A stretch of DNA of 64,000 nt from Haliotis rufescens (taxonomy: Eukaryota): positions 2,666,001 to 2,730,000 of the forward strand of contig NW_025964279.1 of NCBI RefSeq assembly GCF_023055435.1, read 5' to 3'. Both the position numbers and the translations under genes were made by a program. This document shows positions 2,465 to 42,919 of the stretch, in pieces (position 1 is the stretch's first letter; every line of letters begins with the position of its first letter). Below the pieces are notes generated by a model, which was given only the letters and a program-made list of their open reading frames with translations, did not search any database and was not told the DNA's origin.

Positions 2465-2746
2465 CTGTTGACAGGCCGGAGCTCGTCCACGTGACTCTTC
2501 GTGTCACGCCAAGCAAGATGAATATCTGTCTCCGGGTGAAGTTGAACGAGAGCCGGCGCGTGCCACCACTTAACTAGGCGTGCGCTGATTGGCTGTGTGT
2601 ATCGGATCGCGCCGGGCTATTCAGATGTCAAAACATAACTGTACATAGATTAGCGTGGGTAGGGGAATGTTGGGGGTATAAAGGCGGGTCGGGAGGCTGC
2701 GTTCCATCACACTAACTTGTCCCTCAGAGCTGAACACATCGCAGTG
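2465..2746 (+). promoter_or_regulatory. Proximal promoter/5'UTR of Hes paralog 1
   Basis: TATAAA 2677-2682; reverse CCAAT (ctgattggc); class-C Hes site GGCGCGTGCC 2555-2564; TGACAG. Lacks the 44-bp block with CGTGAGAA found in the other four copies. Confidence 0.8.
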
Positions 2747-3966
2747 ATGGAATCTTACTTTGATAACATGGAATCTGACAGTGAATATATGGGCCGAAGA
2801 AAGGTAAGCATCAATTTACTCTTTTAAATAACTTTCAAATGGACTGCTTACAACTTATAAATAACATGTGCTTGTTTACATTTAAAACACGTGGCTAATT
2901 TAATATTCATGAGAAATGGGAATAGACTGTGTTTGTCCCTTTTCTCAGCACACAAGAGTTCTTTCAAAACTTATATTTTGATATTCTGAAATATTGTATG
3001 CAAATATGAAGGAATTTCTCATCAATCTATTTATTTTCTCCAGGGTCGAAAGATGATGGCCGAAAAACGTCGACGAGCCAGAATCAACCAAAGCCTGTCA
3101 AAAATCAAAAGCATCGTGTGTGCGGCACATCAACGAAATGTAAGTGGCTCCCTTTGATCAAATCCATGTTCACCATCTATTTTCCCAGCAAGATTACTCA
3201 TTTAAAAAAATAAATATATCTATTTCTTTTTCATTTACAACAGAAGTTGCGTGTTTTAAAATATACAATTTAATAAGATGAAATATTTTCTTCAATTTCT
3301 CAGCCTTGTTTATTTATTGTTATTAAATTTTTCCAGGACCCAAACTATGACAAGATGGAGAAGGCCGAGATTCTGGAGACGACTGTAGATTATCTGAGGA
3401 ATGTCAGGAAGATCAACACCACACATCAACACGTGAAAGAAGCAGTTCAAGCCAGATTCCATCATGGCTTCTCCAAATGTGCTGAAGAAATACTCTCCTA
3501 CATTCAGTCTCTGCCAGGAGTGTCGGACAATGTACACCATCAGCTGAGAAAACACATCTCTCGACGTATGACGCACATTCAGCAGGTGCCCGCGACGTCA
3601 TCAACAGATGATGTGACGTCATACACAAGTCAGTGCTCCGAGCGACTGAGAACAGTACCTTCCCACAATTCCAAATATCAACATCCTGCTGCACATGCGT
3701 ACATGAACAGGACAGTGTGCACTTCCCCCGTGAAGGAGGACAATAGTTTTTCAGACAGTGGATATGCTGGTTCTCCTGAAAGTGTCAAACAATCCACCCC
3801 AAGAACCGGACGCTATCACTCCAGTCTCTCGTATTCAGAACTTAGATGTAAAGTACCGTCAGAAATGGTTGACAAAGACTCGAGAGTGAGAGCGTGGCTC
3901 CAGAGCACGTGGTCCTACTCACAGCAGATTAGGACGGAGCAACAGGTTCCATGGAGGCCCTGGTAA
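2747..3966 (+). CDS. Hes: HES-family bHLH-Orange-WRPW repressor, paralog 1; exons 2747-2803, 3044-3139, 3337-3966; 260 aa
   Basis: GT-AG phase-0 introns join MESYFDNMESDSEYMGRRK / GRKMMAEKRRRARINQSLSKIKSIVCAAHQRN / DPNYDKMEKAEILETTVDYLR. This is followed by an Orange domain (RFHHGFSKCAEEILSYIQSLPGVSDNVHHQLRKHI) and C-terminal WRPW. The 96-nt exon 2 and intron positions match the HES1-type layout. Confidence 0.96.
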
Positions 3967-4041
3967 AATGCTCCATGCAACTTTATATTTTGGACACGTC
4001 ATAATGGTGCTTCTTTATATCGGTCTTTTCATATACATTGT

Positions 4042-4049
4042 CTGTGATA
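4042..4049 (+). promoter_or_regulatory. K-box (CTGTGATA, miR-2-family seed match) in paralog 1 3'UTR; also at 11914-11921, 29233-29240, 42830-42837
   Basis: Exact cTGTGATa 47-114 nt after the stop codon in four paralogs. Confidence 0.65.
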
Positions 4050-4451
4050 AATTATATTTGTAGATAAAGATGTATTATTTAACTCTTGTATCCTTCGTTG
4101 TTTTTACGGATTCATGATGCGCCTATTCTAATCAAGATGTACTGGTGTATGTACTAGTGCACCTTGGTTAGAATAGTTTTCCAAGAATCAGGTCTGCTAG
4201 CTGTCGATCCATAATAAATACGAGTTAAGTAGTAAAATATTATTATCCTTTGTTCTGTCGTCACCTATCAGAAGGAAAACAGATTCTGACAATGAGCATC
4301 TGAAACATCTGAGCATTTTATCCAACAACAGTTTGTTTTAACCACAAACACGTGTGTATTGTTCAGACATGTGGATACACAGTTACACAATTAAATATTT
4401 CATTGTTTGATAGGCATTACTTAGAAGTTGACGGGAGACAAGAAAGACACA

Positions 4452-4637
4452 ATTTTATGGATAACAACTTCCTTAATACTGTGAAAAGCGACGTTTCGGT
4501 CAACTGCGTGACAACGGTGTAAGGATCTATTCCGAAACTGCGTGACAGCGGTATAAGAATCAATTCCGAAACTGCGTGACAACGGCATAAGGAAACGTCG
4601 CTTTTCACAGTATTAAAGAAGTTGTTATCCATAAAAT
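4452..4637. repeat. Palindromic element with ~45-bp inverted arms and three internal ~35-bp units; related to 21058-21395
   Basis: ATTTTATGGATAACAACTTC...AAAAGCGACGTTTC / GAAACGTCGCTTTT...GAAGTTGTTATCCATAAAAT. Confidence 0.8.
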
Positions 4638-5194
4638 AGTATCCACCTAAATATTTCGTTTCGGACAAAATTCAAAACGCACTTGCTTATCTCTCTAACA
4701 ACATTCCCAGCATTCCACTCAATGGCTGACTGAAAGGTGGTAAACATCTCTACAGTGGTAACTGATCCTATTAATAGCTCATCTACGTTGAAAAGGTAAC
4801 TGTTTTCCCTGGTGAATTGGGTTTACTGTTTTGAACAGTAAATCAGATGTGTCTGGAAGCGTATTGTTAAGAAAAAGTCAGGAATGAAGTAGAAATGACA
4901 GCAAAAAGAACCAAAGTCTTAGAATGAATACATGGGTGAAATTTAAATTAAATTCAACTGGTTTCGTTTAATCAGATGATAAGACCCGGCGAACAGACTG
5001 GTTTACCAGATGTCAGCTTAAACACTGGGAAACTTTGAAACAGGCCTGGCGTCGACATGATATCCATTAAAGTATCTCCATAAAAGCACAACTCCGTCCG
5101 TCCGTCGCTTTGAATAGACACAAACAGTGAAAACACAAATGAAAGTATATAAAATCCGTGTAGGGTCATTATAAACGACCTCCACCCAGCTCCT

Positions 5195-5295
5195 GCACGC
5201 CTCGAACTGGGACAGGCGTTAGTTGTGACACTGATCACCACAGGTGCCCGTATGTCACGTGATCTTACCAGAGCGTGACGACGCGAAGTGTCACA
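5195..5295 (+). promoter_or_regulatory. Conserved 3' module B core (other copies 12874-12975 +, 22198-22298 +, 44702-44802 -)
   Basis: Ordered motifs CACGCCT...TGACAC...CAGGTGC...GTCACGTGA...CGTGACGACGCGAAGTGTCAC, retained downstream of paralogs 1, 2, 3 and 5. Confidence 0.65.
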
Positions 5296-5894
5296 CAGCG
5301 AACATTGAGAAGTAGAGTGGCGGAATGTGACTCAAAGGCCGAAATTATCACTGGGATATTAATTTAGGTGTCAATACTGAAAGCACATTCCTGGGGCATT
5401 TCAGAGGAATGTGTCGCCATTTGTATAACCGCACTTTCTGCATTCAAAGCGTTTTTAAAAAAAACCGATTTCCTGGGTGTGAATGAGTTCAATATTATGA
5501 CGGAAGGTCTATCGCATATAGAACCCTGGTCTATCTCTCAGACCCTGGAGAATGTATTGAAAAGGGAAAATCAGAATAGAGTAGAATCATTTGACAAGTC
5601 TAGATTTTGTGTGTGGATATATGTATATATTTAAATGACTAAATTTAAGTCATATAGACTGCCCGATTATGATTACAATTTAGTGCACACTCGTAAATAC
5701 TTAAAAAAGGAAACCAACTCAAGTCTAGATTGCCTCAGCTCTGAATGTAAACGTTGCTCTGAGCTCCTTTGGATACACATATATATTTTTTTCTGGGTCT
5801 CTCCGGACAACACGTGCAAGGGTTTCGCTATACAACGCAATAATCTTGAACGCGATCTCTTTTAAAAGTCTCACCTTTTGGTTCCAGCCTCATA

Positions 5895-6372
5895 TATGAC
5901 GATAATTATTAATGGGATGTTAAATAAGGCGTCATTGCTGAAACTACATGGCATAATAAGTTACTCTTTCTCAACTATCATTTCGGATGTCTTAGCCTCT
6001 TGTCAATTTTTATTTCTACTTTCTCACCAAGACATTATTATGATAACAGTTTGGTGTCAAATAATCACCCGCATTGTCTGATAATTACAATCAGTTTCCC
6101 CATAACTAGTTGCTGAGAGGCCAAGTCGTTAGTGTCAGTTGCCGGTCATAAGGAAACCGTTAATTATTCCGATAGGGGGCGCAACCTTCTCCATAAGCAG
6201 CGGGGAACTGCACGCTTAACATTCTGATGCACGAGGTCGTAGTGTCTGCAATGTCCGCAGTGTTGACTGGACAATCAGTTATTCCACGTGACGTGTTTTC
6301 ACCTCGGTGTCAAGGCACGAAATAATTAATCAAAGTTACTGGCGATCTTGTGAAACATTGCATTCGACAGGT
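5895..6372 (+). promoter_or_regulatory. Duplicated non-coding module A
   Basis: High similarity to 13400-13757 (same orientation, same position downstream of a Hes gene) and to 1-500 (inverted). Confidence 0.6.
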
Positions 6373-6579
6373 GGCAGTGTGTGAGTGAGTGAGTTTGGTT
6401 TTCGGCTTTGAACAGTATTTCAGTTATGTTACGGCGTGTCAGCTTAATCTTGGGAGAAAGCAAAATGGTGGGGAGATTCGGAGATGTTTTTCCACCTTTT
6501 TTAGCTCACGAGCATGGTCAGGCTCACCACAGATCTTACTGCACTTTTATGAATAATACTGACAATATTTAATCACATT

Positions 6580-6727
6580 GAGTGAGTATTGTTTTACGCC
6601 GTTTAGCAATATTCCTGCATTATCAAGGTGGGAGACACCAGAAATGGGCTTCACACATTGTACCCATGTGGGGAATCGAACCGGGTTTTCGGCGTGACGA
6701 GTGAACGCTATAACCACAAGGCCACCC
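6580..6727 (-). mobile_element. SINE family A, degraded
   Basis: Same consensus with deletions. Confidence 0.8.
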
Positions 6728-7639
6728 TTGATCAAATTGAACCTTATTGAATCATAATGATCATGTTGAACCTTTGGGAATAATATAATATAATATGGAT
6801 GAATGTATTGGAGTCGTGTTGTATATGGTTCGCTCGAACCTATGCGCACTATTTCTTGTTTCAAAACTGCTCCATTTTAAACTGTCCAGTCGATCCGAAA
6901 GCACAGATATCACAAGTTTGCCCTTCTGTTATTTAGTGTCTGTAGTTTAGAACAATTTCTAAGGTTGCAGTCATAAGTTTCTAATACTTCAGGTGGGACG
7001 AGATCAGAGAGATAGTTCAAAGTTATTGTTTATTTATTAAAACGTAGTCAATTCAGTTTTATGGTTTCTTTCTCTAAAAGGCACAAAAGCTGTTGGCACT
7101 AGTGGCACGAACTGCGCTACAAAAAGGCCAAAGAGCATCAAAGTATAGTTCTTCAAGCATCAGTGACTGCCCTTTGGAACATTCATCCCCGATATGACAT
7201 ACACTTAAGACATGTTGTTTTATATTTGAACTATAGTTAAAATTTCTGGGAGAGTTTATCATAAGACTAACTTTTTAACTATTTCACTGGAATACTCTTA
7301 CTCCAGGACCACTCGTAATGGAGAAAAAATCCAAATTGTTTGTGTGGTTGAACTTCCTTTTAAAAGTTTCATCATTATGATTATAATGTAAAACATATTT
7401 GGGTTTATTTTTCATTGTGTGAAATCCAACAACAGACCTGATCTTAGGTCACTTTTCTCAGTCTTAGCAACTGTTTCGTCCACGAAACTTGTAACTGTGA
7501 TTTGAGTAAACATAAACAGTATTTGAGTAAACATAACAAGTTCTGTTCACTTCGCTCAAAAAGAAAACAAATAATTAAATCCACATTTTCGTGGTTTTTT
7601 CATTGTGTAAAATCCACAATTCACAGATCTGGTCATAGG

Positions 7640-10139: not shown

Positions 10140-10467
10140 ATTGTTGACAGGCCGGGTGCTCGGCCACGTAACTCCTCGTGTCACGCCAAGCAAGAAGCTC
10201 TCTGCTCCTGAAGAAAATCATCCCTGTCGGGTCGTGAGAAGAACATCTGTCTCCGGGTGAAGTTTAACGCGATCCGGCGCGTGCCACCACTTAGCAAGGT
10301 GTGCGCTGATTGGCTGCGTGTATCGGATCGCGCCGGGCTATTCAGATGTCAAAACATAACTGTGCATAGATTAGCGTGGGTAGGGGAATGTTAGGGGTAT
10401 AAAGGCGGGTCGGGAGGCTGCGTTCCATTACACCAACTTGTCTCTCACAGCTGAACACATCGCAGTG
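10140..10467 (+). promoter_or_regulatory. Proximal promoter/5'UTR of Hes paralog 2
   Basis: TATAAA 10398-10403; Su(H)/CSL site CGTGAGAA 10233-10240; class-C site 10276-10285; N-box (CTCGTG); reverse CCAAT. Confidence 0.8.
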
Positions 10468-11822
10468 ATGGAATCTTACTTTGATAACATGGAATCTGAC
10501 AGTGAATATATGGGCCGAAGAAAGGTAAGCATCAATTTACTCTTATAAAAAAAGTTTCAAATGGTCTGTTTATAATGTGTAAATTACATGTGCTTGTTCG
10601 TGACTGAAACACGTGGCTAATTTAATATTCATAGGTATGGGAATAGACTGTGGGTTTTTCCCTTTCTCAATACTCTAAATAAGTATTCTTTTTGTCTGTC
10701 TTACATTCAAGTCTATAATAATTGGCAAGTCTAGATTACTGCAGTACCAGGGTGAAGAGAGTCTCTGGTCTTTTTATTATATTTTTATTAAGATAATTTA
10801 ACAACTGTTTTCTGTAGGATATGTTCATTTCAGAGACTAGAGTCATGCGAAGCGTTCTTTCAGAACATATATTTTGATAACCTGAAATATTATATGCAAA
10901 CATGAATACATTTCATATGAAACTGTTTTTTTCTCCAGAGTCGAAAGATAATGGCTGAAAAACGGCGACGAGCTAGAATCAACCAAAGCCTGTCAACAAT
11001 CAAAAGCATCTTGTGTGCGGCACATAAACGAAGTGTAAGTAGCTCCCTTTGATGTTTACAATCTATATTCACATTCACATACTCCTATTTCAAATTAAAG
11101 ACGGAAATAATATCTTTCTTGTTTTTAAAAATAATTTCTTAAATATCACGATGTATGCCTTGGTTATTTATTGTTATTAATTTTTCCAGGACCCCAACTA
11201 TGAGAAGATGGAGAAGGCCGAGATTCTGGAGACGACTGTAGATTATCTGAGGAACGTCAGGAAGATCAGCACCACACATCAACACGTCAAAGAAGCAGTT
11301 CAAGCCAGATTCCAACATGGCTTCTCCAAATGTGCTGAAGAAATCCTCTCCTACATTCAGTCTCTGCCAGGAGTGTCGGACAATGTACATCGTCAGCTGA
11401 GGAAACACATCTCTCGACGTATGATGCACATTCAGCAGGTGCCCATGACATCATCAACAGATGATGTGACGTCATACACAAGTCAGTGCTCCGAGCGACT
11501 GAGAACAATACCCTCCCTCAATGTCCAATATCAACATCCGGCTGCGCCAGCGTACATGAACAGGACAGTGTGCACTTCCCCTGTGAAGGAGGACAATAGT
11601 TTCTCAGACAGTGGATATGCTGGTTCTCCTGATAGTGTCAAACAATCCACCCCCAGAGCCGGACACTATCACTCACTTAATCTCTCAGATTCAGAACTTA
11701 GTTGTAAAATACCATCAGAAATGGTTGACAAAGACTCGAGAGTGAGGGCGTGGCTCCAGACCACGTGGTCCTACTCACAGCAGATCAAGACGGAGCAACA
11801 GGTTCCATGGAGACCCTGGTAA
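10468..11822 (+). CDS. Hes: HES-family repressor, paralog 2; exons 10468-10524, 10939-11034, 11190-11822; 261 aa
   Basis: Same structure as paralog 1; exon 2 SRKIMAEKRRRARINQSLSTIKSILCAAHKRS; Orange domain; WRPW; no frameshifts or stops. Confidence 0.95.
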
Positions 11823-13399
11823 AATGCTCCATGCAACTTTATATGAACAATAGCTGTGATTTTGTATACGATATAAAAGTGCTATTTCATACAAGACATT
11901 TCATATTCATTGTCTGTGATAAATTATATTCGTTGATATATGAAATATAATTTAACTCTACTATACTTCGTTGTTGTAATTGTTTTTTTCGAGTTTATAT
12001 CAGTAGAATGCACTAGTACACCTTGATTAGAATAGGTTACCAGGAATCTGTTCTGCTAGCTACTTGGGATTGAAGTGACGATGCATAACGATTAAGTTAC
12101 TATCAAAGTAGTAAAACATTATGATCCTTTATACTGTCGTCAGCTTGCTTCTGAAAGAAAAACAATCTGGCAATGAGCACTTAGACATGTGTACAAACAG
12201 AATCACAAATAAATATTTGATATTGAACTAAAATCAAAACTCACTTGCTTAATAATTTTCCTATCATTCGACTTGCCATATGGCTCGCTATAACACAACT
12301 GCCATGGTGGTAAACCTGTGTTGCAATAGTCTTGCCGTGGTGCTATACAGACTGTTGCAAAAGTTAAAATGTCAGCACAAAGTTAATCACATCTAATGGT
12401 CATACATGGCTACAGTGAGCGTCAACTTTTCCTATTAAAGGTCTCTACGAAAATGTAATCCCCAGAATTGGGTTAACCGTTTTGTACAATACTTCACAGT
12501 TGTTGTGGAACGTATTGGTAAAGAATAGGCAAAAATGACGCAGATGTGTTCCACTGACAAAGTCCCTGCAAAACAAACACAGGTGAAATTGCATATCACA
12601 GAAGTTGAATTTTTAGAATTAAATTTAACTGGTTTAATTAAATCAGATGGTAAAACCTGGTGAACAGACCATGTGTTTACCAGGTGCAAGCTTGAACCTT
12701 TGCAACTTTTAAAATGCCTGGCGGCGACATCATATCCATAAAGGTACTCCATTAAAGCACAACTCCGTCCAAACTCCTCCTGAATAGACACAAACAATGA
12801 ATACACAATTGAAAGTATATAAAATCCGTGTGTTATCCGTGTGTTCATTATGAACGACCTCCACCCAGCTCCTGCACGCCTCGAACTGGGACAGTGGGAA
12901 TGTTGTGACACTAATCACGACAGGTGCCCGTATGTCAGGTGACCTTACCAGAGCGTGACAACGCGAAGTGTCACATAGCTGTACATTGAAGGGGAGTGGC
13001 GGAATGGGCCCCTTGTCCGAAATTATTGATGTGATATTATTTGTGGGGACATTACTGAAGCACGTTCCTTGGGCCAAATCTTGGCGCCACATCCAGCACT
13101 GCGCCATACAATTTGTACATTAGACCAATTTTTCTTGCATAAGTAAGTTCAACCTGCTCAATATTTTGACGGTGTGGTGTGATCAATCATCGTTCGTTTT
13201 GACTGCTAGTTACAGTCAGCTACTCTATACTCAATGCACACAAGCATATTATTCGCATCACGGGATATTCAAGCCAAGTACCATACAGTTTTATAATCTG
13301 TCACTCCTTCTAAACTGTTATTAATATTACAGCTTTCTTAGCGATTCTCACAGGGTGCATTTTGCACCGTGTTCGTTCACAACTATCTGGTAGCACCCT

Positions 13400-17014: not shown

Positions 17015-17180
17015 GGGGCGGTCGGGTAGCCTCTTGGTTAAAACGTTCGCTCGTCACGCCGAAGACCCGGGTTCGAATCCCGACATGGGTACAATGTGTG
17101 AAGCCCATTTCTGATGTCCCCCGCCGTGATATTGCTGGAATATTGCTAAAAGCGGCGTGAAACCAAACTCACTCACTCAC
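17015..17180 (+). mobile_element. SINE family A
   Basis: Full-length GGGGCGGTCGGGTAGCC...(ACTC)n. Confidence 0.9.
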
Positions 17181-17919: not shown

Positions 17920-18264
17920 AATTGTTGACAGGCAGATTGTTGACAGGACGGGTGTTCATTTACGTTAGGCCTCGTGTCACGCCAAGCAAGATGCTCCCTG
18001 CTCCTGAAGAATATCATCCCTGTCGGGTCGTGAGAAGAACATCTGTCTCTTGGTGATGTTTAACGAGAGCCGGCGCGTGCCACCACTTAAGCTAGGCGTG
18101 CGCTGATTGGCTGCGTGTATCGGATCGCGCCGGGCTATTCAGATGTCAAAACATAACTGTGCATAGATTAGCGTGGGTAGGGGAATGTTAGGGGTATAAA
18201 GGCGGGTCGGGAGGCCGCGTTCCATCACACTAACTTGTCTCTCAGAGCTGACAACATCGCAGTG
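17920..18264 (+). promoter_or_regulatory. Proximal promoter/5'UTR of Hes paralog 3
   Basis: TATAAA 18195-18200; CGTGAGAA 18029-18036; class-C site 18072-18081; locally duplicated ATTGTTGACAGG. Confidence 0.8.
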
Positions 18265-19624
18265 ATGGAATCTTACTTTCAAAACACGGAACCTGGCAGT
18301 GAATATATGGGCCGAAGAAAGGTAGGCTTGCTCATATCATTAAGTTTCAAATGCACTGTTTACAACCTCTAAATAATATGTGCTTGTTTACACCACGAAC
18401 ACGTGGCTAATTTCATAATCATGAGAAATGGGAATAGACTGTGTCCCAGTCGTTATATTTGATAGAATCACGTGTCGTGATCTTCATTGCATTTACATTC
18501 ACATCGTTGTTTCATTCTGATCTGGGTTTTTTCAGGGTCGAAAGTTAATGGCTGAAAAACGGCGACGAGCCAGAATCAACCAGTGTCTGTCAGAAATCAA
18601 GGGCATCGTGTGTGGAGCTCATCAACAAAATGTAAGTATTCTTACTTATATTTAACTAAGTATTTACATCTCATTTTAATGTCAGTTTACTTGTTGATAT
18701 ATATGAAAATTTTCACGAATGTTTTTTTCTATAGACCCAAGGGATGAAAAACGTATGATAGTTTTGGTGATAATAGCTGAACCACAAAATACGCTCATCT
18801 TTAAGCGATCACCTGGTGTCATCACTAATTGATATATAAAATATATTGAAATATAAACACTTATTTCTGACATTGGTATGTTTATCGTCGTTGGCTTGAT
18901 TTTCAAACTATCTATATTTTGAAACAATTTACGCGTCTTTTATATTACTATAATTCAATTACATAATTTATTGTCATTGTTCAAGGACCCAAACTATGAC
19001 AAGATGGAGAAGGCCGAGATTCTGGAGACGACCGTAGATTATCTGAGGAACGTCAGGAAGATCAGCACCACACATCAACACGTCAAAGAAGCAGTTCAAG
19101 CCAGATTCCAACATGGCTTCTCCAAATGTGCTGAAGAAATCCTCTCCTACATTCAGTCTCTGCCAGGAGTGTCGGACAATGTACACCGTCAGCTGAGAAA
19201 ACACATCTCTCGACGCACGACGCACATTCAACAGGTGCCCGTGACGTCATCAACAGATGATGTGACGTCATACACAAGTCAGTGCTATGAGAGACTGAGC
19301 GCAGCGCCTTCCCACAGTTCCCAATATCAACATCCGGCTGCGCCAGCGTACATGAGAAGGACAGTGTGCACTTCCCCCGTGAAGGAGGACAATAGTTTCT
19401 CAGACAGTGGATATGCTGGTTCTCCTGACATTATCAAACAATCCACCCCCAGAACCGGACACTATCACTCATCCAATCTTTCAGATTCAGAACTTTGTAA
19501 AATGGAGTCGAGCAGAATCCACAAAAACTTTGATGACTCGAGAGTGAGGGCGTGGCTCCAGAGTACGTGGTCCTACTCTCAACAAATCAAGACGGAGCAA
19601 CAGGTTCCATGGAGGCCGTGGTGA
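18265..19624 (+). CDS. Hes: HES-family repressor, paralog 3; exons 18265-18321, 18536-18631, 18986-19624; 263 aa
   Basis: Exon 1 MESYFQNTEPGSEYMGRRK; exon 2 GRKLMAEKRRRARINQCLSEIKGIVCGAHQQN; exon 3 acceptor is ttcaag (AAG rather than CAG); WRPW. Confidence 0.94.
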
Positions 19625-20250
19625 ATTGCTTTATACAGAATATGAACTTATGATTCACAGTTACATAAATAAATATTATGGTGCAACAATCGCATCACAT
19701 AGTGCTTATTCTATTCATATACTTTCATATAAATTGTCTGTGGTATATTACACATGTTGATGAATATAAATGATTTATTTACGAACATCTTTTTGCGTTA
19801 TATATTTTCATATTATTGGCGACTTTCCATTCAATGGATAACATGCCCGTGTTTAACACACGGAATAGACCTTCTTGAGTTATCATGCTATCAACCACTT
19901 GTTTGTGATGGACCGGATCCAGTTGTTCCGTAAAATTATGTTGCATAGTGAAATTGAAACACTTGCATTGGAAACTATGAAAAAGGGCAAGATAGACACA
20001 TGAACTTGTGGATAACACTTGATGAATTGTTATTAAAACGTGAAAGTGTATCAGAAAAAGTATGTAGCGTGATAAGAAAAAGAAAGTATACACCCAAGTT
20101 TTATGGCTAAAAATGAAACATGAATGGTTATTAGATGGTGATGTATTTCATACGGGTATCATAGTTGTGTGTCTTCAGCCTTGTAACATTTGTAATTGTT
20201 TTGTCAATCTAATTTACAAGTGTATAGCTCAGAAGAATTTATGACTCTGT

Positions 20251-27314: not shown

Positions 27315-27647
27315 GGCGGATTGTTGACAGGCCGGGTGCTCGTCCTCGTAACTCCTCGTGTCACGCCAAGCAAGATGCTCCTTGCACCTGAAGAATATCA
27401 TCCCTGTCGGGTCGTGAGAACAACATCTGTCTCGGGGTGAAGTTTAACGCGAGCCGGCGCGTGCCACCACTTAGCTAGGCGTGCGCTGATTGGCTGCGTG
27501 TATCGGATCGCGCCGGGCTATTCAGATGTCAAAACATAACTGTGCATAGATTAGCGTGGGTAGGGGAATGTTGGGGGTATAAAGGCGGGTCGGGAGGCCG
27601 CGTTCCATCACACTAACTTGTCCCTCAGAGCTGACCACATCGCAGTG
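27315..27647 (+). promoter_or_regulatory. Proximal promoter/5'UTR of Hes paralog 4
   Basis: TATAAA 27578-27583; CGTGAGAA 27413-27420; class-C site 27456-27465. Confidence 0.8.
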
Positions 27648-29119
27648 ATGGAATCTTACTTTCATAACACGGAATCCGACAATGAATATATGGGCCGAAG
27701 AAAGGTAGGCATTAGTTTGCTCATATAATTAAGTTTCAAATGGTCTGTTTACCACTTGTAAATTGCACGTGACTAATTTGATGGGAATAGACTGTGTCCC
27801 AGTCGTGTAGTTCATAGAAACTCCGTGTCGTAATTTTTTATAGGATTTACCTTCAAACTGTCATTCTACTTGGAACACGTGGCCAATGCACTATTCGTGT
27901 GAAATGGGAAAAATCCGATCTTCTCTTTTACCTAGAAACATTTTTATCTTCATGGAAATAGGGCACATCTTCAAACAATATTTCATATTTTGTTTATTAA
28001 TTAATCTCTTTATCTTACAGGGTCGAAAATTAATGGCTGAAAAACGGCGACGAGCCAGAATCAACCAGAGTCTGTCAGAAATCAAAGGCATCGTGTGTCG
28101 AGAGCAACAACAAAATGTAAGTATTGTCACATTTCAGTGATCTGGGACAGACTTTGTCATAATCATATACACCCGTGAAGATCCGGGGTAGAATAGGTCT
28201 TCAGCAACCCATGCTTTCGTAAAAGTAAAAGTGACTATGCTTGTCGTCAGAGGCGACTAACGGGATCCCAGTTTCGTGGATCGATTCTCATGATGTCAAT
28301 CACTGGACTGTCTGGTCCAGACTCGATTATTTACAGGCCGCCGTCAAAAAGCTGGAATATTGCTGAGTTAGCAACAAACAAACAAAACAAACACAATAAT
28401 ATCCACCGATACGCAAGTGCTATTTCTCCTCTACACAATATATAACATGTATTTATGTTATTATTATTCCGTTTTTCCAGGACCCCAATTATGACAAGAT
28501 GGAGAAGGCAGAGATTCTGGAGACGACTGTAGATTATCTGAGGAACGTCAGGAAGATCAACACCACACATCAACACGTCAAAGAAGCAGTTCAAGCCAGA
28601 TTCCAACATGGCTTCTCCAAATGTGCTAAAGAAATCCTCTCCTACATTCAGTCTCTGCCAGGAGTGTCGGACAATGTACACCATCAGCTGAGAAAACACA
28701 TCTCTCGACGCATGACGCACATTCAACAGGTACACGTGACGTCATCAACAGATGATGTGACGTCATACACAAATCAGTGCTATGAGAGACTGAGCGCAGT
28801 GCCTTCCCGCAATTCCCAATATCCACATCCGGCTGCGCATGCGTACATGAACAGGACAGTGTGCACTTCCCCCGTGAAGGAGGACAACAGTTTCTCAGAC
28901 AGTGGATATGCTGGTTCTCCTGACATTATCAAACAATCCACCCCCAGAACCGGACACTATCTCTCATCCAATCTCTCAGATTCAGAACTTTGTAAAATGG
29001 AGTCGAGAAGAATCCACAAAAACTTTGATGACTCGAGAGTGAGGGCGTGGCTCCAGAGTACGTGGTCCTACTCTCAACAAATCAAGACGGAGCAACAGGT
29101 TCCATGGAGGCCCTGGTGA
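27648..29119 (+). CDS. Hes: HES-family repressor, paralog 4; exons 27648-27704, 28021-28116, 28481-29119; 263 aa
   Basis: Exon 1 MESYFHNTESDNEYMGRRK; exon 2 GRKLMAEKRRRARINQSLSEIKGIVCREQQQN; WRPW; intron 2 contains a retroposon. Confidence 0.95.
28171..28390 (+). mobile_element. Short retroposon family B in intron 2 of Hes paralog 4
   Basis: Consensus match with an internal deletion. Confidence 0.82.
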
Positions 29120-29849
29120 TTTGTTCCATAAATGGACTTGTTTTGGGATGAACATCTAGATACATATGTATTCTTCCCATCGTACTATCAAATCTTTGAA
29201 CCCTGGTACCACATGAGTGCTGCCATTGACAACTGTGATAAATCCCATAACGGGATTACAATAAAGGCTTTAAATATAATATCGTTTTGTTTGCCTTGTT
29301 GCCTCTATGTAAACTGTTGGAAGATTTTTGTATTTGCATTTAAACTGGGGGAGGTATAGCCTGGTAGGTAAGGTGTTAGCCTGTTGCGCCTAAAACCTTG
29401 GTTCGGTTTTCAACATAAGTACAGTGCCTGTGACCCATTCCTTGTGTTCCCCCGTTGAATATTTTAAAAGCTTAGATTATGTTAAATTTTTATTTTATAT
29501 TGACACAATATTATATAAAACCAAATAATTATAATATAAACCCTTTCCTATTTATGATAGGCATGATATGGTAAGCTGAGTGAATATTGTTTAATGCACA
29601 GTATTTCGGTTATATATCGTGTTATATAAGTGGGGGAAGGCCAGAATCCATACAGATGTTCGACATAAACCACTTTCGTGAAAGACACGAGCACGGGTAT
29701 GGTTCTAACAAACCAAGGCACGTAATCAGTGCGAATCAAGATTCGAAACATCTGCACAGCGAATTGTGAAACCTAAGAGGGTTGATTTGCTTAAATGCGT
29801 CCAAATGAACATATTTATATACTCACGGGCCTATATACTTCTATACAAC

Positions 29850-32812: not shown

Positions 32813-32967
32813 CGGGGCGGTCGGGTAGCCTAGTGGTTAAAGCGTTCGCTTGTCACGCCGAAGACCCGGGTTCGATTCCCGACATGGGTACAATGTGTGA
32901 AGCCCATTTCCGTGATATTGCTTGAATATTGCTAAAAGCGGCGTAAAACCATACTCACTCACTCACT
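32813..32967 (+). mobile_element. SINE family A
   Basis: TSD TCTTCAAGATAAGC. Confidence 0.9.
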
Positions 32968-36108: not shown

Positions 36109-38024
36109 TTTATGATAATTGAAAGGGCTTTGTCGCTTTTATATTTGCGCATATCACTCTTGGTTAGCGCAGCTTCACGGACCTGAATAACGATAATTTA
36201 AGTCCGTACAGTTTCAATAATATTTATACATGTTTCGTTCCATTCGTTTTCTTTGAACATATCAGTTTCTGTGAATACTGGTAAGGCAGGACATGCTTAC
36301 CCTTTTCGCGAAGGCCTATTGTCATCAATGATTTTCAGTGATCCATTTATATTTCTAGTAGTTTCCACCCCTATTTTGTCTTTGACGCCAAATGGAGTCT
36401 GTAACGTTGGATAATCGAGACTGGTTATCATCTAGCATTGACGTTTAATGTTTATATATATTCAGTGTTATGATTTAACTACACCAGTACATACATTTAA
36501 AAGATATCCACTACAATAGCCTTAACTTACTTACTTACTTTGGAGATTTAACGTGCGCTTTTCGACTGATGCGTATTTCGCACACGGGCCCGGCCAGGCC
36601 ATTTAATGTGTTTCCGAAAGGGGCGAAAGTGGTGTGTGCAACCCAAGAGGGGGCTTTAGGGGTTGCTTATATCGAATTTGGGAATGTTGAGAACAATCGC
36701 CTTAAAGGTTGTAACGAAAATTTATGTTCTTTGATAGTCACTGTGGACAAACACTGACAATAAAACCGCCAATATCACGTACTTTTATTCGCAATATACA
36801 TGTCAATTACTCAATCTCGTTTCATCGAATTTGTTCCCTATCAGCTGTTTTGTCCAGCCCAGAGGGGGTTCATCACCAGATAGACCATCATAAACTGGAT
36901 GGATGGCCGTGAACAATGACGTTACGTCACAGACCTCAGCGTGACGTCATAATGATCTGTGATATACCATGGTGTTTATAACACAGACAGTGATGTGAGG
37001 TGTTGACACTAATGGACTTACTTCACTCTGCCGGACGGGGGAATCAACTACAGCGTGCTACAGTTTCTGATACGAGACTTTCATAAACATTGGATTAAGT
37101 TAGATCAAGTTAGACAAGTGCATATCAGCACATGGATTCACGGATTAACTTTAGAGTGAGTTTATTCTTATCGAATCAGTGGACGACGGCTGCATAGCTA
37201 GACTGTCGGAATAGTCTGTTTCCCAGGCCCAAGAGAATCCAAGGAGTCCAACTCAAGTCTAGAATGATTGGGCATGCTCAGATTGTCTCAGTTCTAAGAA
37301 ATTAAGCATTTTTCTGGGCTCCATTTGGATTTTATTATTGTTATTTTTTTTTATAGATGTATGTTTTAGAATAAGATATCTTTATTTTTAGGACTAAATG
37401 TAAGTCTAAATAGGCAGGTAACGGTCATTTAGATTCAATTAGAAACCATTTTTCGTGTTTAAATTTTGTAGGGCACTGACGTTGGGTGGGGTAATGACAA
37501 GTAGTTGTACAGTGATACTAGTACCTGTATTAAGCACGCAATATGTACGTGACATATAAACCACACAAGTTATGACAAGGGTTGTGAAAACATACAAACA
37601 GTTAACTACGGTTATAACGAACTCAAAGGGACCCAAATTTTAGTTCGTTATAACCGTAATTCGTTATAAGCATATATACAGCATAACTACAGCATATAGT
37701 CGGGACTAAAAAGTTAGTTCGTTATATCCGTTAGTTCGTTATAAGCGCGTTCGTTATAACCGTAGTTTACTTTACTTACAACTGATATTGCACAACATGG
37801 GACCAAGGACACTAGCACAAGTCTCTAAGGCAATAACTATTAGTTTTAATCATAATTTCTAGATTATATCAACAATAAGAACAAGTTGTCCTTATAAGAG
37901 ACTGGAGCCCTCAGATTTACTGTCCATATATCATATCTAGACTTGACTATAGGGGGATAGAATTACTACACATCCAGGGACTTGTCTTCCAGTACAGCTT
38001 AAACACTCTGACTCTGGTACCTCA

Positions 38025-38186
38025 GGGAGGTCGGGTAGCCTAGTGGTTAAAGCGTTCGCTCGTCACGCCGAAGACTCGGGTTCGATTCCCGACATGGGTA
38101 CAATGTGTGACGCCTATTTCTGGTGTCCCCCGCCGTGATATTGCTGGAATATTGCTAAAGCGGCGTAAAACCATACTCACTCACTC
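38025..38186 (+). mobile_element. SINE family A
   Basis: Consensus match. Confidence 0.88.
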
Positions 38187-41084
38187 CAGTACAGCCTTGG
38201 AGCATTGTCAGACACTAGCTCATATAAAGGCTTGTTTGTTTCACAGCCGACCAATTAACCCCCGAAGTTATGCATACGGTTTAAATAATAAAATAAAATC
38301 TAAAAGGGGACTCTCGAGCATTAGGCCTTGAGCTTAGACTGAGATGAGTTTAGGCTGGCAGGGGTTGAGAAAGGGATGAGGGATGGAATGGGGCTGGTTG
38401 TAAGGGCATTTAGTCTATGAAATCTTATATTACACAATATCCTTCTCGACTCTAAAAATTAAACAAATAATTTTCCCCAATGCTGATTTCATATGTAGAA
38501 TAGAGCTAGATAGAGCTGGCTAAACTTGCTTTTGTATACATATCTAGATTGGGTTTTTCTTCATAAAATAAATAAATTCCACAGTCTTGGTGCAGGACAA
38601 GGACGGCCATTGTACATGATATTTTTATTTTTTAAATAATTTTATATTTGCATGTAGAAAAGGGTGAGACAAAAATAAACAATGCCTCTCTCTGACAAAT
38701 ATAGGCTCCGGGATCTGCAAGAGAGACTACTTTCAGAGTCGCATGACAAACAGAAATGAACGAAAGTAAACCAAAATGTGTTTAACAATGTGTTTTCCAC
38801 ATTTACTACGGTAAGTCCACCTCTGTCCGCACTGTAGGATGAAAAATCAAATGTGCAGTTTGGTCTTAAAAGACAATTTCTTTGACCAATTTCATCAGAT
38901 GAAGCTTGTTCCCAGCTGAACAAACAGGTGTACAGGCTTAATGACTGGAAACGTTTTCTTTGCGCCTGCGCTGACCGAGTGTGTTATACAGGACATATCC
39001 CCTGGGGTGAAGCTGTCACCCCGACACCCAACTCAACAGTTTCATTATGACTTGACTGGGTGTCGTGTTTGTCACCAACAGCTCTGGTCGTCGACGCCAC
39101 TTACTGAGTACTTGATTGTAATTACCTGGCCGTGTCACCGGCGACCTACAAGGTGAAGTGGTATACATACAGTGAGGGTTGTCATGTCTTTTATTCAGCA
39201 TGTGAACGTGTCAAAATAGCTACCATTAATGTGAAATATAAATATATTGAATGTATATACTATATTCTAGCAGTTTAGTTCTCTTAACTTGTATTTTACT
39301 TGTGAATTAGTGTCGCATGGGCCGTTTGGCCGGACAGGACCTGCTCAATATGTGAAAATGAAAACGAATGAAACATCAATGAACTGTGTGGTATTTAAAT
39401 ATAATCTTCTTCTTCTTCTATAAATAGAAAACCAAAATGTTAAAGTTTAATGTTAGTCAAATTGATAATTGAAATGTTTAATGGTTCTTGTTTTTGCGTT
39501 CTAATATCAGAGGGAAACTTCATAAAATTTAAAACATATTTATTCCACAGATACCTGGATTGACTGACAGGCAACATTTAGCTTATGTAATACGCTACAG
39601 TAATACATGGCGTATACGCTTCATAATATTTGAACTACTACTACTACTACTACGAAAAAAACAAGAAATCAAAAACAAATTTGAATCTTGTCGACAAATT
39701 ACAGGTGTGATTAACAAGACACATATAATACAAGTCCCTAAAACACGTATATGATATGTGATTTACAATGACACTATATTCATAACATGTGCTACCATAG
39801 TGTTCGATTGGAAATAGCACCACAGTGACCAAAATAAAACTAATTTCATATACCATTTTTGTAAGATTATTTTAGGAGGTATCCTAATCTAAAGTGCACA
39901 GACAAACGGCCCACACGAAACAAGTATGACATAATTATATATTACATAATTCTATAATATTATCCCAATGTTAATATATTTTAAAGTTTTGTAAAAAACT
40001 GACCTTGATTTTTCCGGCTACTTCCAAAGGTGATACCTAAATACCCGAACTTGTTTCCGTTATATTATAAACATTGATGTTTTTCCAAATGAGCATATAG
40101 TTCTATATTTGGTATGGATTTGTACAGATTTACCAATTTTACCAGGGTAGCTGAAGTCTAGACATGATTTATTCAACTATTAACAGCCACATGGCACTGA
40201 TCGGTCTGGCGACTCATTAAGAAGATTAATTAGCAATGTCAAGTAAGATAATGATGTCACTATCGATCTGCGAGTCAGACAGACAGCTTATCTGTGTATA
40301 TCTTATCTTTCAGTGTTTATACATGGATAATGTACGAGATTAACTCTATTGCCTGTACGTTAGGCGACGATCTTAAGTTGTAGGGGTAAAATCAAAATGG
40401 AAATAATTTTTAAAATATACTTTGAAATTCATGTGAAATAAGATTTAATCGAGCAGGATATTAATTGTATCTAGTTATCTCAACATACAGATAATTTAGA
40501 CAAAGTATAATAAAGTAAACAAAAAATAAGGGCAATTATCTGAACCCTAAATATTGAACTGAGACACTTATTCTTGACGAATACTGACTGGGATATTCTG
40601 CATTATTTTAACAGAGGCTTATAGATCAATATTATTTATCTTCAGAAGTACTGGTAGAACGTCATTTTTAGTTTTATAGGTTTTCAATTCACGCTGCCCT
40701 TACTTGCTTTATAATCCAAGAAATTATAAGTAAATAAATGCACTTCTACATGTGAATTTACCATACCCGAATGCATATGAATATTAATTTTGTTTCTTTA
40801 ACAAACCAAATATGATAGTTACACATGTTTGAAATTTGTGCCATTTTGAAAACATTACACCCCAAATTCCTCAATAAAAATATGTGTTTATTCTTCTTCA
40901 TATTCCTTACTTTAAAATAATGCTAGCGACCAAAGTTATATCAAGTCCTCATAAGATATAACGGTATATCGGAATCTGGGCCGCATGTGACGCTATGCCG
41001 CGCGTGACACGTTCTGAATAGAAAGTTGTTAAAAATATTTGAGCATGGAGTCTATTTTATTTAGACACATTAATGGCTGTACAT

Positions 41085-41420
41085 TGAGGCGGATTGTTGA
41101 CAGGCCGGGTGCTCGGCCACGTAACTCCTCGTGTCACGCTGAGCAAGATGCTCCCTGCTCCTGAAGAATATCATCCCTGCCGGGTCGTGAGAAGAACATC
41201 TGCTTCCGGGTGAAGTTTAACGCGAGCCGGCTCGTGCCACCACTTTGCTAGGCGTGCGCTGATTGGCTGCGTGTGTCGGATCGCGCCGGGCTATTCAGAT
41301 GTCAAAACATAACTGTGCATAGATTAGCGTGGGTAAGGGAATGTTGGGGGTATAAAGGCGGGTCGGGAGGCTGCGTTCCATCACACTAACTTGTCTCCCA
41401 GAGCTGAACACATCGCAGTG
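41085..41420 (+). promoter_or_regulatory. Proximal promoter/5'UTR of Hes paralog 5
   Basis: TATAAA 41351-41356; CGTGAGAA 41186-41193; class-C site changed to N-box GGCTCGTGCC 41229-41238. Confidence 0.8.
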
Positions 41421-42783
41421 ATGGAATCATTCGATAGACACACGGAATCAGACTCGGAATATATTGGATATAGAAAGGTACACATTGTTTTTATTTGGTT
41501 TCTGTCAGTGAACAGAAAGTCAATTTTTGGGCTTTTACAAATATCGACGCCCTCCCATATTCACGTAGCTAATGAATTAATCATGAATACTACTGCTATT
41601 TGCATCTTGCCAAATTCACATCTCTCCCCTTTACAGTAATAACTAGTTATAATTCTGAGGAACACGATATTGTCCTGTATATATATTATTTAATTATATA
41701 CTGTAACAAAATACTCATGCTGATATATTATTTTCTCCAGGGTCGAAAACTGTTGGCAGAAAAACGGCGACGGGCCAGAATCAACCAATGTATGTCAGAA
41801 ATCAAGGGCATCGTTTGTGGGGCAGAGCAAAAAAACGTAAGCATATTATTTTAAATTTATTTCAGTTTTCTATTTCTTAAGCTGTGTGAAAGGCAGCGTT
41901 CATCGTTTAATAACCTTAGATACGACATGTATTGATTTTAGGGGTTATTAAATCTTTTTTTATATCTTTGTAATGGAATAGAAGTAATGTACCGGTAAAT
42001 GAAATACAATTCCTAATTTACTTGTATTTGTTTTCAAAATCGTTTATTGTTTTGTATCTATGCTTTTCTATATATACATAACATACAACGTACTAATATT
42101 TTGTCATCCGTTTTTTCCAGGACCCCAACTATGAGAAGATGGAGAAGGCCGAGATTCTGGAGACGACTGTAGATTATCTGAGGAACGTCAGGAAGATCAA
42201 CACCACACATAAACACGTCAAAGAAGCAGTTCAAGCCAGATTCCAACATGGCTTCTCCAAATGTGCTGAAGAAATCCTCTCCTATGTTCACTCTCTGCCA
42301 GGAGTGTCGGACAATGTACACCGTCAGCTGAGAAAACACATCTCTCGACGTATGACGCACATTCAGCAGGTGCCCGTGACGTCACCAACAGGGAATGTGA
42401 CGTCACACCCAAGTCAGTGCCATGAGCGACTGAGAACAATACCCTCCCACAGTTCCCAGTTTCCACATCCGGCTGCGCATGCGTACATGAGCAGGACAGT
42501 GTGCACTTCCCCCGTGAAGGAAGACAACAGTTTCTCAGACAGTGGATATGCTGGTTCTCCTGATTTTATCAAACAATCAACCCCCAGAACCGGACATTCT
42601 AATCTCTCAGATTCAGAACTGTGCAAAATGGAACCTAAAAGTTCCAACACAAACTTTGACGATTCAAGGGTAAGGGCGTGGCTCCAGAGCACGTGGTTCT
42701 ACTCTCAGCAAATGAAAATGGAGCCCTATGGTCGTGCAGCCCTTCGATCGCCAACAACAGGCGACGTTTGGCGACCATGGTGA
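41421..42783 (+). CDS. Hes: HES-family repressor, paralog 5 (most divergent); exons 41421-41477, 41741-41836, 42121-42783; 271 aa
   Basis: Exon 1 MESFDRHTESDSEYIGYRK; exon 2 GRKLLAEKRRRARINQCMSEIKGIVCGAEQKN; distinct C-terminus MKMEPYGRAALRSPTTGDVWRPW. Confidence 0.95.
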
Positions 42784-42919
42784 CAATTACAGCAAATATC
42801 CTCATTCACAAAACAAACCGAGTCTACACCTGTGATATCAAACCAAAGTGCTAAATAAATACAACTATCATATACATTTGTTTTATTTTTAGTTCAAATG
42901 CTGGTTATTTGTTATCTGG

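What the first reader, a model, noticed from the sequence alone, without database searches (positions are those of the whole stretch)
2465..42850. E(spl)-Complex-like cluster: five intact tandem Hes repressors sharing Su(H), Hes-box and K-box regulatory motifs
Seen: five co-oriented, intact bHLH-Orange-WRPW genes with ATG spacings of 7721, 7797, 9383 and 13773 bp. The ~300-bp promoter is nearly invariant (TATA exactly 70 bp before every ATG), while introns and 3'UTRs have diverged. Established: a CSL site, Hes autorepression sites and 3'UTR K-boxes are the regulatory signature of the Drosophila E(spl)-C, whose bHLH genes are intronless. These genes keep two HES1-type introns. Inference: an independent, lineage-specific expansion in a probable mollusc that uses the same Notch-in, self-repression, miRNA-out logic, possibly as a dosage or pulse/oscillator module. 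Lineage-specific Hes expansions are known in spiralians, so the novelty lies in the combination of features.
Basis: partly seen in the sequence, partly recalled or inferred. Interest (0 to 1): 0.85.

Follow-up and report, generated by a model that had tools for sequence, protein, structure and literature searches.

The report
Abalone tandem array of Hes repressors
Red abalone carries a real tandem array of seven (five in this window) unusual Hes repressor genes that share an almost unchanged promoter and a conserved miR-2 target site; gene clusters of this kind are already known in molluscs, so only the regulatory details are new.

Summary
The window is Haliotis rufescens contig C501. It has five intact, co-oriented bHLH-Orange-WRPW genes, with ATGs at 2747, 10468, 18265, 27648 and 41421 and TATAAA exactly 70 bp upstream of each. 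My gene models equal RefSeq proteins. Two more copies lie just upstream of the window, so the array has seven genes.

- **Promoter:** the 235-bp core is 88-97% identical between copies, while introns and 3' flanks are unalignable.
- **miR-2 site (strongest result):** the 8-mer CTGTGATA lies 29-114 nt after the stop codon in 6 of 7 copies, with different flanks in most. It is the reverse complement of nt 1-8 of the genome's own miR-2.
- **Notch input (weaker):** one consensus CSL site (CGTGAGAA, -235) occurs in 5 of 7 copies, with no paired site and no enrichment. Canonical Hes genes of the same genome carry three sites each.
- **Protein family:** a gastropod-wide Hes clade that lacks the basic-region proline. 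Orthologues of single copies exist in four Haliotis species, so these are not haplotigs.
- **Concerted evolution:** uneven dS along the genes suggests gene conversion helps keep the promoter uniform.

Tandem Hes clusters are published for gastropods, bivalves and annelids. This is a new member of a known kind.

The parts
2512..2746 (+). g1 promoter core and 5'UTR: class-C box CGCGTG 2557, CCAAT block 2584, E-box CAGATG 2622, CGTGGGTA 2654, TATAAAGG 2677. The CSL site and first E-box are lost through a ~55-bp deletion.
2747..2803 (+). g1 exon 1
   Evidence: spliced model = P0001 (XP_046370527)
3044..3139 (+). g1 exon 2 (96 bp; basic region and helix 1, no proline)
3337..3966 (+). g1 exon 3 (loop, helix 2, Orange, WRPW, stop)
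4042..4049 (+). g1 K-box 8-mer CTGTGATA, 76 nt after the stop
10233..10467 (+). g2 promoter core: CSL CGTGAGAA 10233, E-box 10244, class-C 10278, CCAAT 10305, E-box 10343, CGTGGGTA 10375, TATA 10398
10468..10524 (+). g2 exon 1
   Evidence: model = P0030 (XP_046370528)
10939..11034 (+). g2 exon 2
11190..11822 (+). g2 exon 3
11914..11921 (+). g2 K-box 8-mer (92 nt after the stop); a further TGTGAT at 11855
18029..18264 (+). g3 promoter core: CSL 18029, E-box 18040, class-C 18074, CCAAT 18102, E-box 18140, CGTGGGTA 18172, TATA 18195
18265..18321 (+). g3 exon 1
   Evidence: model = P0023 (XP_046370529)
18536..18631 (+). g3 exon 2
18986..19624 (+). g3 exon 3
19738..19745 (+). g3 decayed K-box (CTGTGGTA), homologous to the g1/g2 site and downstream of an AATAAA at 19668; a 6-mer TGTGAT remains at 19904
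27413..27647 (+). g4 promoter core: CSL 27413, E-box 27424, class-C 27458, CCAAT 27485, E-box 27523, CGTGGGTA 27555, TATA 27578
27648..27704 (+). g4 exon 1
   Evidence: model = P0004 (XP_046370531)
28021..28116 (+). g4 exon 2
28481..29119 (+). g4 exon 3
29233..29240 (+). g4 K-box 8-mer, 114 nt after the stop and 19 nt before AATAAA at 29260
41186..41420 (+). g5 promoter core: CSL 41186, E-box 41197, N-box-like CTCGTG 41231 in place of the class-C box, CCAAT 41258, E-box 41296, CGTGGGTA 41328, TATA 41351
41421..41477 (+). g5 exon 1
   Evidence: model = P0015 (XP_046333673)
41741..41836 (+). g5 exon 2
42121..42783 (+). g5 exon 3
42830..42837 (+). g5 K-box 8-mer, 47 nt after the stop and 16 nt before AATAAA at 42854

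Best explanation
This is the downstream five-sevenths of a seven-gene, head-to-tail array in red abalone (Haliotis rufescens, contig C501 about 2,648,900-2,708,800). The genes belong to a fast-evolving, gastropod-specific branch of the Hes family. Each encodes a ~260-aa repressor with a bHLH whose basic region has Leu/Met/Ile where Hes proteins normally have proline, an Orange domain and a terminal WRPW, the Groucho-recruiting motif. Shown here: the genes are intact and under purifying selection. Each H. rufescens copy has its own orthologue in H. cracherodii, and two copy types (A and g5) have orthologues in all four Haliotis species sampled. Each copy starts with the same ~235-bp promoter module, holding an E-box, a class-C/N-box, a CCAAT block, a second E-box and TATA. 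A consensus CSL site sits just upstream of this in five copies. Six copies keep an exact 8-mer match to miR-2 just after the stop codon, ahead of the first poly(A) signal. Inferred: the copies are switched on together by the same activators (NF-Y, class-A bHLH factors, and probably Su(H)/Notch for five of them). Their products repress through Groucho and may feed back on the class-C box. miR-2 trims or clears the short transcripts. The uniform promoter is most likely kept by functional constraint together with gene conversion between copies.
For: - **Organism and gene models:** searches give a 100% match to RefSeq H. rufescens proteins on a 3,045,862-bp contig.
- **Seven copies:**
- **Domains:**
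- **Purifying selection:** dN/dS 0.17-0.53.
- **Orthologues per copy:** H. rufescens and H. cracherodii copies pair one to one, and orthogroups A (99/94) and g5 (93/41) span four species; species labels are fully interspersed.
- **Promoter:** divergence 0.05-0.12 against whole-CDS dS 0.15-0.53, and above 1 for A-g5 in exons 1-2 and the C-terminus. Homology between units stops at exon edges.
- **Promoter motifs:**
- **K-box:** CTGTGATA is the most shared 8-mer in the first 300 nt of the seven 3' flanks (6 of 7). No 8-mer reached 6 of 7 in 2000 shuffles.
- **miR-2:** four tandem mir-2 hairpins above Rfam threshold in this genome contain TATCACAGCCAGCTTTGATGA.
- **Partners present:** Su(H) and Groucho/TLE loci.
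- **Clade placement:**
Against:
- CSL consensus sites are not enriched in the window (10 against 8.94 expected). There is one unpaired site at most per gene. It is absent from g1 and B, while four canonical Hes loci of the same genome have three each.
- Because the whole promoter block is nearly invariant, conservation cannot single out any motif within it.
- The missing basic-region proline leaves DNA-site preference, and hence autorepression through the class-C box, uncertain.
- 3' ends are not mapped, so the placement of the K-box inside the mature UTR rests on poly(A) signal positions only.
- The dS trough over helix 2 and Orange, and the mosaic nearest-neighbour pattern, show that conversion may explain part of the promoter uniformity.
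Confidence: 0.72

Rival explanations
1. The near-identical promoter is mainly a product of concerted evolution (gene conversion or unequal exchange between copies), not of base-by-base selection, so its invariance says little about function.
For: Synonymous divergence is very uneven. For A against g5 it is 1.27 in exons 1-2, 0.14 over helix 2 and Orange, and 1.08 in the C-terminus. The C-terminal third groups {A,B,g3,g4}, {g1,g2} and {g5}, whereas exons 1-2 do not. g3-g4 have dS 0.07, yet their introns are unalignable.
Against: Promoter similarity ends sharply at codon 3 in all pairs, and exon 1, which directly adjoins it, is 6-32% diverged. Conversion tracts would not be expected to respect the start codon in every pair. 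Proteins group by orthologue, not by species, so there has been no wholesale homogenisation since the Haliotis species split. The two views are not exclusive.
Confidence: 0.4
2. The array is not a direct Notch target. It is driven by other activators (class-A bHLH at the two CATCTG/CAGATG boxes, NF-Y at CCAAT), and the single CSL match is incidental or vestigial.
For: There is one unpaired site, lost by deletion in g1 and by substitutions in B while the rest of the core stays intact. There is no enrichment. Canonical Hes loci of the same genome carry three consensus sites each, including CGTGGGAA close to TATA in HES-4-like.
Against: CGTGAGAA is an exact match to YGTGRGAA. About 0.04 matches would be expected in a 330-bp block. 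It is kept at the same place in five old paralogues, 3 bp from an E-box, an arrangement reminiscent of Su(H)-plus-proneural codes (from memory of the Posakony laboratory's work).
Confidence: 0.35
3. CTGTGATA is kept as a poly(A)-site upstream element or a site for an RNA-binding protein, not as a miRNA target.
For: In A, B, g4 and g5 the 8-mer lies 4 to 25 nt upstream of the first AATAAA/ATTAAA.
Against: All eight positions, including the flanking C and A, match the complement of nt 1-8 of the genome's own miR-2. In g1 and g2 the nearest canonical signal is 160-290 nt away. miR-2 is active in molluscs (PMC12691275).
Confidence: 0.12
4. The copies are collapsed or duplicated haplotypes or another assembly artefact.
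For: None found.
Against: Copies differ by 5-25% in coding sequence, have unalignable introns of different lengths, and one copy lacks intron 1. Each has a separate orthologue in H. cracherodii, and 6-8 copies are annotated in three other Haliotis genomes.
Confidence: 0.01

Closest known systems
Lineage-specific tandem Hes clusters of lophotrochozoans (Lottia, Pinctada, Crassostrea, Capitella, Platynereis; PMC4172395, PMC5381572, PMC8166818)
   Same: Tandem, mostly co-oriented Hes paralogues made by local duplication, with bHLH-Orange-WRPW proteins and two introns at conserved places in the bHLH.
   Different: Seven genes in one array, against the clusters of three and four reported for the two other lophotrochozoans checked for linkage in PMC4172395. 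The subfamily lacks the basic-region proline. Promoter and 3'UTR motifs were not analysed in those papers, as far as I read them.
Arthropod Enhancer of split complex (Drosophila E(spl)-C)
   Same: A tandem set of Hes-type repressors with shared cis-logic. K-box 3'UTR sites match the miR-2 seed family, and the promoter holds a CSL site beside an E-box and a class-C/N-box.
   Different: Not orthologous: E(spl) proteins are restricted to myriapods, crustaceans and insects (PMC4575448). The abalone genes nest in a gastropod clade and have introns. They show no paired CSL site and no Brd-box or GY-box, and no Bearded-class gene was seen.
Canonical Hes genes of the same genome (e.g. HES-4-like, XP_046369731, C212)
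   Same: Same three-exon plan with a 96-bp exon 2. The promoter shares the 14-nt GCGCTGATTGGCTG block, a CATCTG E-box and a TAGGG-TATA arrangement.
   Different: They keep the proline, are about 30% identical over exon 3, carry three consensus CSL sites each, and only one of six has the 8-mer K-box.

Membership tests
Hes (Hairy/Enhancer-of-split-related) bHLH-Orange repressors | bHLH domain | tested here: met
   Pfam HLH on exon 2 scores 22.8 and 24.3 bits against a cut-off of 20.7. PF00010 is precomputed on the full proteins.
Hes (Hairy/Enhancer-of-split-related) bHLH-Orange repressors | Orange domain after the bHLH | tested here: met
   PF07527 scores 28.4-33.6 bits against a cut-off of 25.3 in all five window genes. 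All seven loci are above the cut-off in the genome scan.
Hes (Hairy/Enhancer-of-split-related) bHLH-Orange repressors | C-terminal WRPW | tested here: met
   WRPW followed by a stop codon in 7 of 7 copies.
Hes (Hairy/Enhancer-of-split-related) bHLH-Orange repressors | Proline in the basic region (typical but not universal) | tested here: not met
   The position holds Leu, Met or Ile (K-[LMI]-x-A-E-K-R-R-R) in all seven copies. 132 of the 139 other Hes representatives in which the basic-region motif could be read keep Pro. I treat this as the mark of a divergent subfamily, because domains and tree place the genes inside Hes.
Hes (Hairy/Enhancer-of-split-related) bHLH-Orange repressors | Phylogenetic placement among Hes proteins | tested here: met
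   The proline-less gastropod clade (100/99) nests among molluscan Hes, with supporting nodes of 95/86 and 88/89. The stem is long, so the exact sister group is unsure.
Arthropod E(spl)-C | Orthology to the E(spl) bHLH-O clade | tested here: not met
   The nearest relatives are gastropod proteins only. The E(spl) clade is limited to Mandibulata (PMC4575448).
Arthropod E(spl)-C | Interspersed Bearded-class genes | tested here: inconclusive
   Nine intergenic ORFs of 115-334 aa gave no Pfam match. Short Bearded-like genes would escape this check.
Arthropod E(spl)-C | Paired Su(H) sites (SPS) with proneural E-boxes | tested here: not met
   One forward CSL site at most, with no inverted partner within 15-17 bp. 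E-boxes are present.
Arthropod E(spl)-C | K-box, Brd-box and GY-box in 3'UTRs | tested here: inconclusive
   The K-box is present in 6 of 7 copies. No Brd-box (AGCTTTA) or GY-box (GTCTTCC) lies within 2.5 kb of any stop codon.
miR-2 (K-box family) target | Seed-matched site in the 3'UTR | tested here: met
   An 8-mer complementary to nt 1-8 of miR-2 lies 29-114 nt after the stop in 6 of 7 copies, upstream of the first canonical poly(A) signal in each. Real 3' ends are not mapped.
miR-2 (K-box family) target | Cognate miRNA encoded in the genome | tested here: met
   Four tandem mir-2 hairpins score 53.7-71.4 bits against a cut-off of 45.5. The mature arm was read directly.
miR-2 (K-box family) target | Site conserved beyond its surroundings | tested here: met
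   It is the top shared 8-mer, with flanks that differ in A, B, g4 and g5. 0 of 2000 shuffles reach 6 of 7.
miR-2 (K-box family) target | Repression by the miRNA | not testable with these tools
   Needs reporter or knock-down experiments.
Direct Notch/CSL target gene | Consensus CSL site in the proximal promoter | tested here: inconclusive
   CGTGAGAA at -235 in A and g2-g5, absent in g1 and B. Not enriched in the window. Fewer sites than at canonical Hes loci.
Direct Notch/CSL target gene | Transcriptional response to Notch activation or inhibition | not testable with these tools
   No expression data were reachable.

The most novel reading that the evidence does not exclude
miR-2 (K-box) control of Hes-type repressors is not an arthropod peculiarity. 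It would be either an old protostome regulatory link or a striking convergence. In abalone it is kept as an exact 8-mer in six paralogues whose 3'UTRs are otherwise randomised, within a co-regulated, partly concerted 'Hes battery' built from a proline-less, gastropod-only Hes lineage.
Probability: 0.3. Interest if true: 0.6.

Novelty: new member of a known kind. Interest (0 to 1): 0.4.

Why it matters
Hes genes are the main read-out of Notch signalling, and why they are repeatedly amplified in tandem in separate animal lineages is still unexplained. This abalone array offers old paralogues whose neutral sequence has been erased, so the few islands that survive point directly at candidate control elements. 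These are a 235-bp promoter module and one 8-nt miR-2 site. If the miR-2 site works, it extends the K-box-Hes link from insects to molluscs. That would give a simple, testable case for asking whether such links are inherited or reinvented. For abalone biology it names seven candidate regulators of larval neurogenesis or shell-field patterning. The cluster itself is ordinary for a lophotrochozoan and is already annotated.

Tried and rejected
- **Cross-species DNA:** Promoters and UTRs of H. cracherodii, H. rubra and H. asinina could therefore not be compared; only their proteins were used.
- **Paired Su(H) site (SPS):** looked for and not found.
- **Brd-box and GY-box:** none near any of the seven genes.
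- **Window-wide CSL enrichment:** none.
- **Window-wide K-box excess:** 12 against 2.4 expected. This is partly due to three copies of one dispersed repeat, so I rely on the 3'-flank k-mer test instead.
- **CGTGGGTA at -93 (7 of 7 copies):** considered as a degenerate CSL site. Alignment with the HES-4-like promoter pairs it with an N-box/TAGGG element as readily as with that gene's CGTGGGAA, so no claim is made.
- **Intergenic ORFs:** no Pfam matches.
- **Word-index protein searches:** they returned almost only Haliotis proteins. The full HMMER scan was needed to find the gastropod subfamily.
- **Haplotig or assembly artefact:** rejected.
- **Structure and complex prediction:** not run, because no claim here depends on them.
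Full report
**What is there**

The window is G000:C501:2666001-2730000 of a 1.33-Gb genome. The exon-3 peptide of the first gene is 100% identical to "transcription factor HES-7.1-A-like [Haliotis rufescens]", on a contig of 3,045,862 bp, the length of C501. The organism is therefore red abalone.

GGTATAAAGG occurs at 2675, 10396, 18193, 27576 and 41349. The ATGs lie at 2747, 10468, 18265, 27648 and 41421, giving spacings of 7721, 7797, 9383 and 13773. A WRPW codon run ends in a stop at 3966, 11822, 19624, 29119 and 42783. TATAAA starts 70 bp before each ATG.

Each gene has three exons of 57 bp, 96 bp and 630-663 bp, with GT-AG introns in phase 0. Pfam places HLH on exon 2 and Hairy_orange on exon 3, above the curated cut-offs.

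**How the spliced models were handled**

Searches were made exon by exon by reference, or with protein ids that the search tools returned. The joined models are identical to RefSeq proteins XP_046370527, -528, -529, -531 and XP_046333673.

**The array is larger than reported**

A six-frame search of the genome finds two more copies on the same strand, just upstream of the window. Copy A has its ATG at window -16766 and equals XP_046370525. Copy B has its ATG at -7085 and equals XP_046370526. Both have the same TATA-to-ATG spacing.

Copy A has lost intron 1 precisely. No further copy lies within 23 kb upstream of A or 61 kb downstream of g5. The genome holds 17 Orange-domain loci in all, and the seven here are the weakest matches to the Pfam model.

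**Conservation pattern**

In an alignment of the seven units, the block from about -235 to the ATG has 94-96% mean column identity. Pairwise differences there are 3.4-11.5%. Exon 2 and exon 3 are conserved, and everything else is at background.

BLASTN between units shows homology ending within a few bases of exon edges. Only g1-g2 share intron and flank similarity. Jukes-Cantor promoter divergence is 0.05-0.12, against whole-CDS dS of 0.15-0.53 and dN of 0.04-0.14. dN/dS is 0.17-0.53, so the proteins are under purifying selection.

dS is very uneven along the genes. The median is 0.69 in exons 1-2, 0.12 over helix 2 and Orange, and 0.40 in the C-terminal third. For A against g5 the values are 1.27, 0.14 and 1.08. 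Nearest-neighbour relations also change along the gene.

The paralogues are therefore old, and there are islands of low divergence. The coding island has low synonymous divergence, which suggests gene conversion. On the other hand, promoter similarity stops at codon 3 in every pair, which suggests constraint. I conclude that both act, and I could not separate them without DNA from other species.

**Promoter content**

All seven copies have:
- TATAAAGG at -70.
- An invariant GCTGATTGGCTG CCAAT block at -163.
- A CAGATG E-box at -125.
- CGTGGGTA at -93.

Six copies have:
- A CATCTG E-box at -224, lost in g1.
- A class-C box at -190 in the context GGCACGCGCC. In g5 it reads CACGAG, which is N-box-like.

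A consensus CSL site, CGTGAGAA, lies at -235 in A, g2, g3, g4 and g5. It is removed by a ~55-bp deletion in g1 and altered by substitutions in B. There is no inverted partner, so no SPS.

Window-wide, YGTGRGAA occurs 10 times against 8.94 expected. As a positive control I read four canonical Hes loci of the same genome. Each carries three consensus 8-mers within 2.6 kb upstream, where about 0.4 would be expected. In HES-4-like, one of them (CGTGGGAA) lies 55 bp before TATA.

That promoter also shares the 14-nt GCGCTGATTGGCTG block and a CATCTG box with the cluster promoter. The module therefore looks inherited from an ancestral Hes promoter. The Notch-input reading is plausible for five copies but is clearly weaker than for canonical Hes genes.

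**3'UTR**

CTGTGATA lies 39, 29, 76, 92, 114 and 47 nt after the stop codon of A, B, g1, g2, g4 and g5. In an unbiased count it is the most shared 8-mer in the first 300 nt of the seven flanks. No 8-mer reached 6 of 7 in 2000 shuffles. The flanks of the motif differ in A, B, g4 and g5.

g3 has CTGTGGTA at the place homologous to g1 and g2, downstream of an AATAAA at +44. In the six intact cases the motif lies ahead of the first canonical poly(A) signal.

The genome encodes four tandem mir-2 hairpins (C101:17033819-17034335), all above the Rfam threshold. Their 3' arms read TATCACAGCCAGCTTTGATGA. The reverse complement of nt 1-8 is CTGTGATA. No Brd-box or GY-box is present. Of six other WRPW Hes loci in the genome, one has the 8-mer.

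miR-2c is functional in a bivalve (PMC12691275). I found no paper in the held library that reports K-boxes in mollusc Hes genes. That is not proof that none exists.

**Family placement**

A full HMMER scan of 1.84 billion representatives gives only three proteins at E<=1e-30: the Haliotis cluster itself, an unnamed fragment, and Gigantopelta "hairy-like". It then falls to generic Hes at about 1e-19.

Of the 139 other Hes representatives in which the basic-region motif could be read, 132 have the basic-region proline. The few with K-L-L-A-E-K-K-R-R include proteins from Aplysia, Lymnaea, Bradybaena and Patella caerulea; one further such representative is an unnamed ENA sequence.

In a tree these, Gigantopelta and all Haliotis copies form one clade (100/99). 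The Haliotis copies are monophyletic within it (99/96), and the clade nests among molluscan Hes. The stem is long, so the sister group is unsure.

Among Haliotis proteins, copies group by orthologue and not by species. Each H. rufescens gene pairs with one from H. cracherodii. Orthogroups A (99/94) and g5 (93/41) contain all four species. The array therefore predates the Haliotis radiation at least in part and is not an assembly artefact.

Su(H) and Groucho/TLE genes are present.

**Comparison with what is known**

Many independent, lineage-specific tandem Hes duplications are documented, including clusters in gastropods and bivalves, with the same two bHLH introns (PMC4172395, PMC5381572, PMC8166818). 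E(spl)-C proteins are confined to Mandibulata (PMC4575448). This array is therefore an analogue of E(spl)-C, not a member.

It resembles E(spl)-C in tandem arrangement, the K-box, and a CSL site next to an E-box. It differs in having introns, no SPS, no Brd or GY boxes, and no visible Bearded genes.

**Verdict**

The finding is a real and well-described feature. It is a new member of a known kind, already annotated gene by gene. The parts worth following up are:
- The conserved miR-2 8-mer.
- The ultra-stable promoter module.
- The gastropod-wide proline-less Hes lineage.

Noticed in passing
G000:C501:2649235-2650189 and 2658916-2660403 (window -16766..-15811 and -7085..-5597; loci L012, L013): Two further intact copies (A, B) of the same gene family lie just upstream of the window. 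Copy A has precisely lost intron 1, so exons 1 and 2 are fused.
   Followed up: yes
all seven genes; e.g. window 3337-3546 against 2747-3139: Synonymous divergence is about 0.12 over helix 2 and Orange but 0.7 to over 1 in exons 1-2 and the C-terminus. The C-terminal third groups {A,B,g3,g4}, {g1,g2} and {g5}. This mosaic pattern suggests gene conversion.
   Followed up: partly
G000:C101:17033819-17034335 (L016 1500-2020): Four tandem mir-2 hairpins, each with TATCACAGCCAGCTTTGATGA on the 3' arm.
   Followed up: yes
L038-L041 (C212:3253001-3263000, C212:3294001-3304000, C35:20860001-20870000, C35:20775001-20785000): Canonical, proline-bearing Hes genes occur in two further loose clusters. Each carries three consensus CSL sites upstream. 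The HES-4-like promoter shares a 14-nt CCAAT block with the array's promoter.
   Followed up: partly
window 32819-32890, 38029-38100, 46192-46263, 50084-50155 (+): Four weak Rfam tRNA matches (29.5-34.9 bits) that ARAGORN does not call. They are probably tRNA-derived SINE heads in the intergenic DNA.
   Followed up: no
window 56576-57623, 57881-58882, 60091-61042, 63226-63998: Satellite arrays with periods of 19, 26, 13 and 20 bp. They explain the strong GC skew at 56-62 kb and the long spurious ORFs there.
   Followed up: no
window 7905, 14484, 36957 (+): Three copies of one dispersed repeat (...gtgacgtcat(g/a)ataatCTGTGATAta...) carry the K-box 8-mer and inflate its window-wide count.
   Followed up: partly
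window 4460-4640: A 34-bp tandem repeat (2.7 copies, 4502-4593) is framed by an inverted repeat downstream of g1. It looks like a small MITE-type insertion.
   Followed up: no
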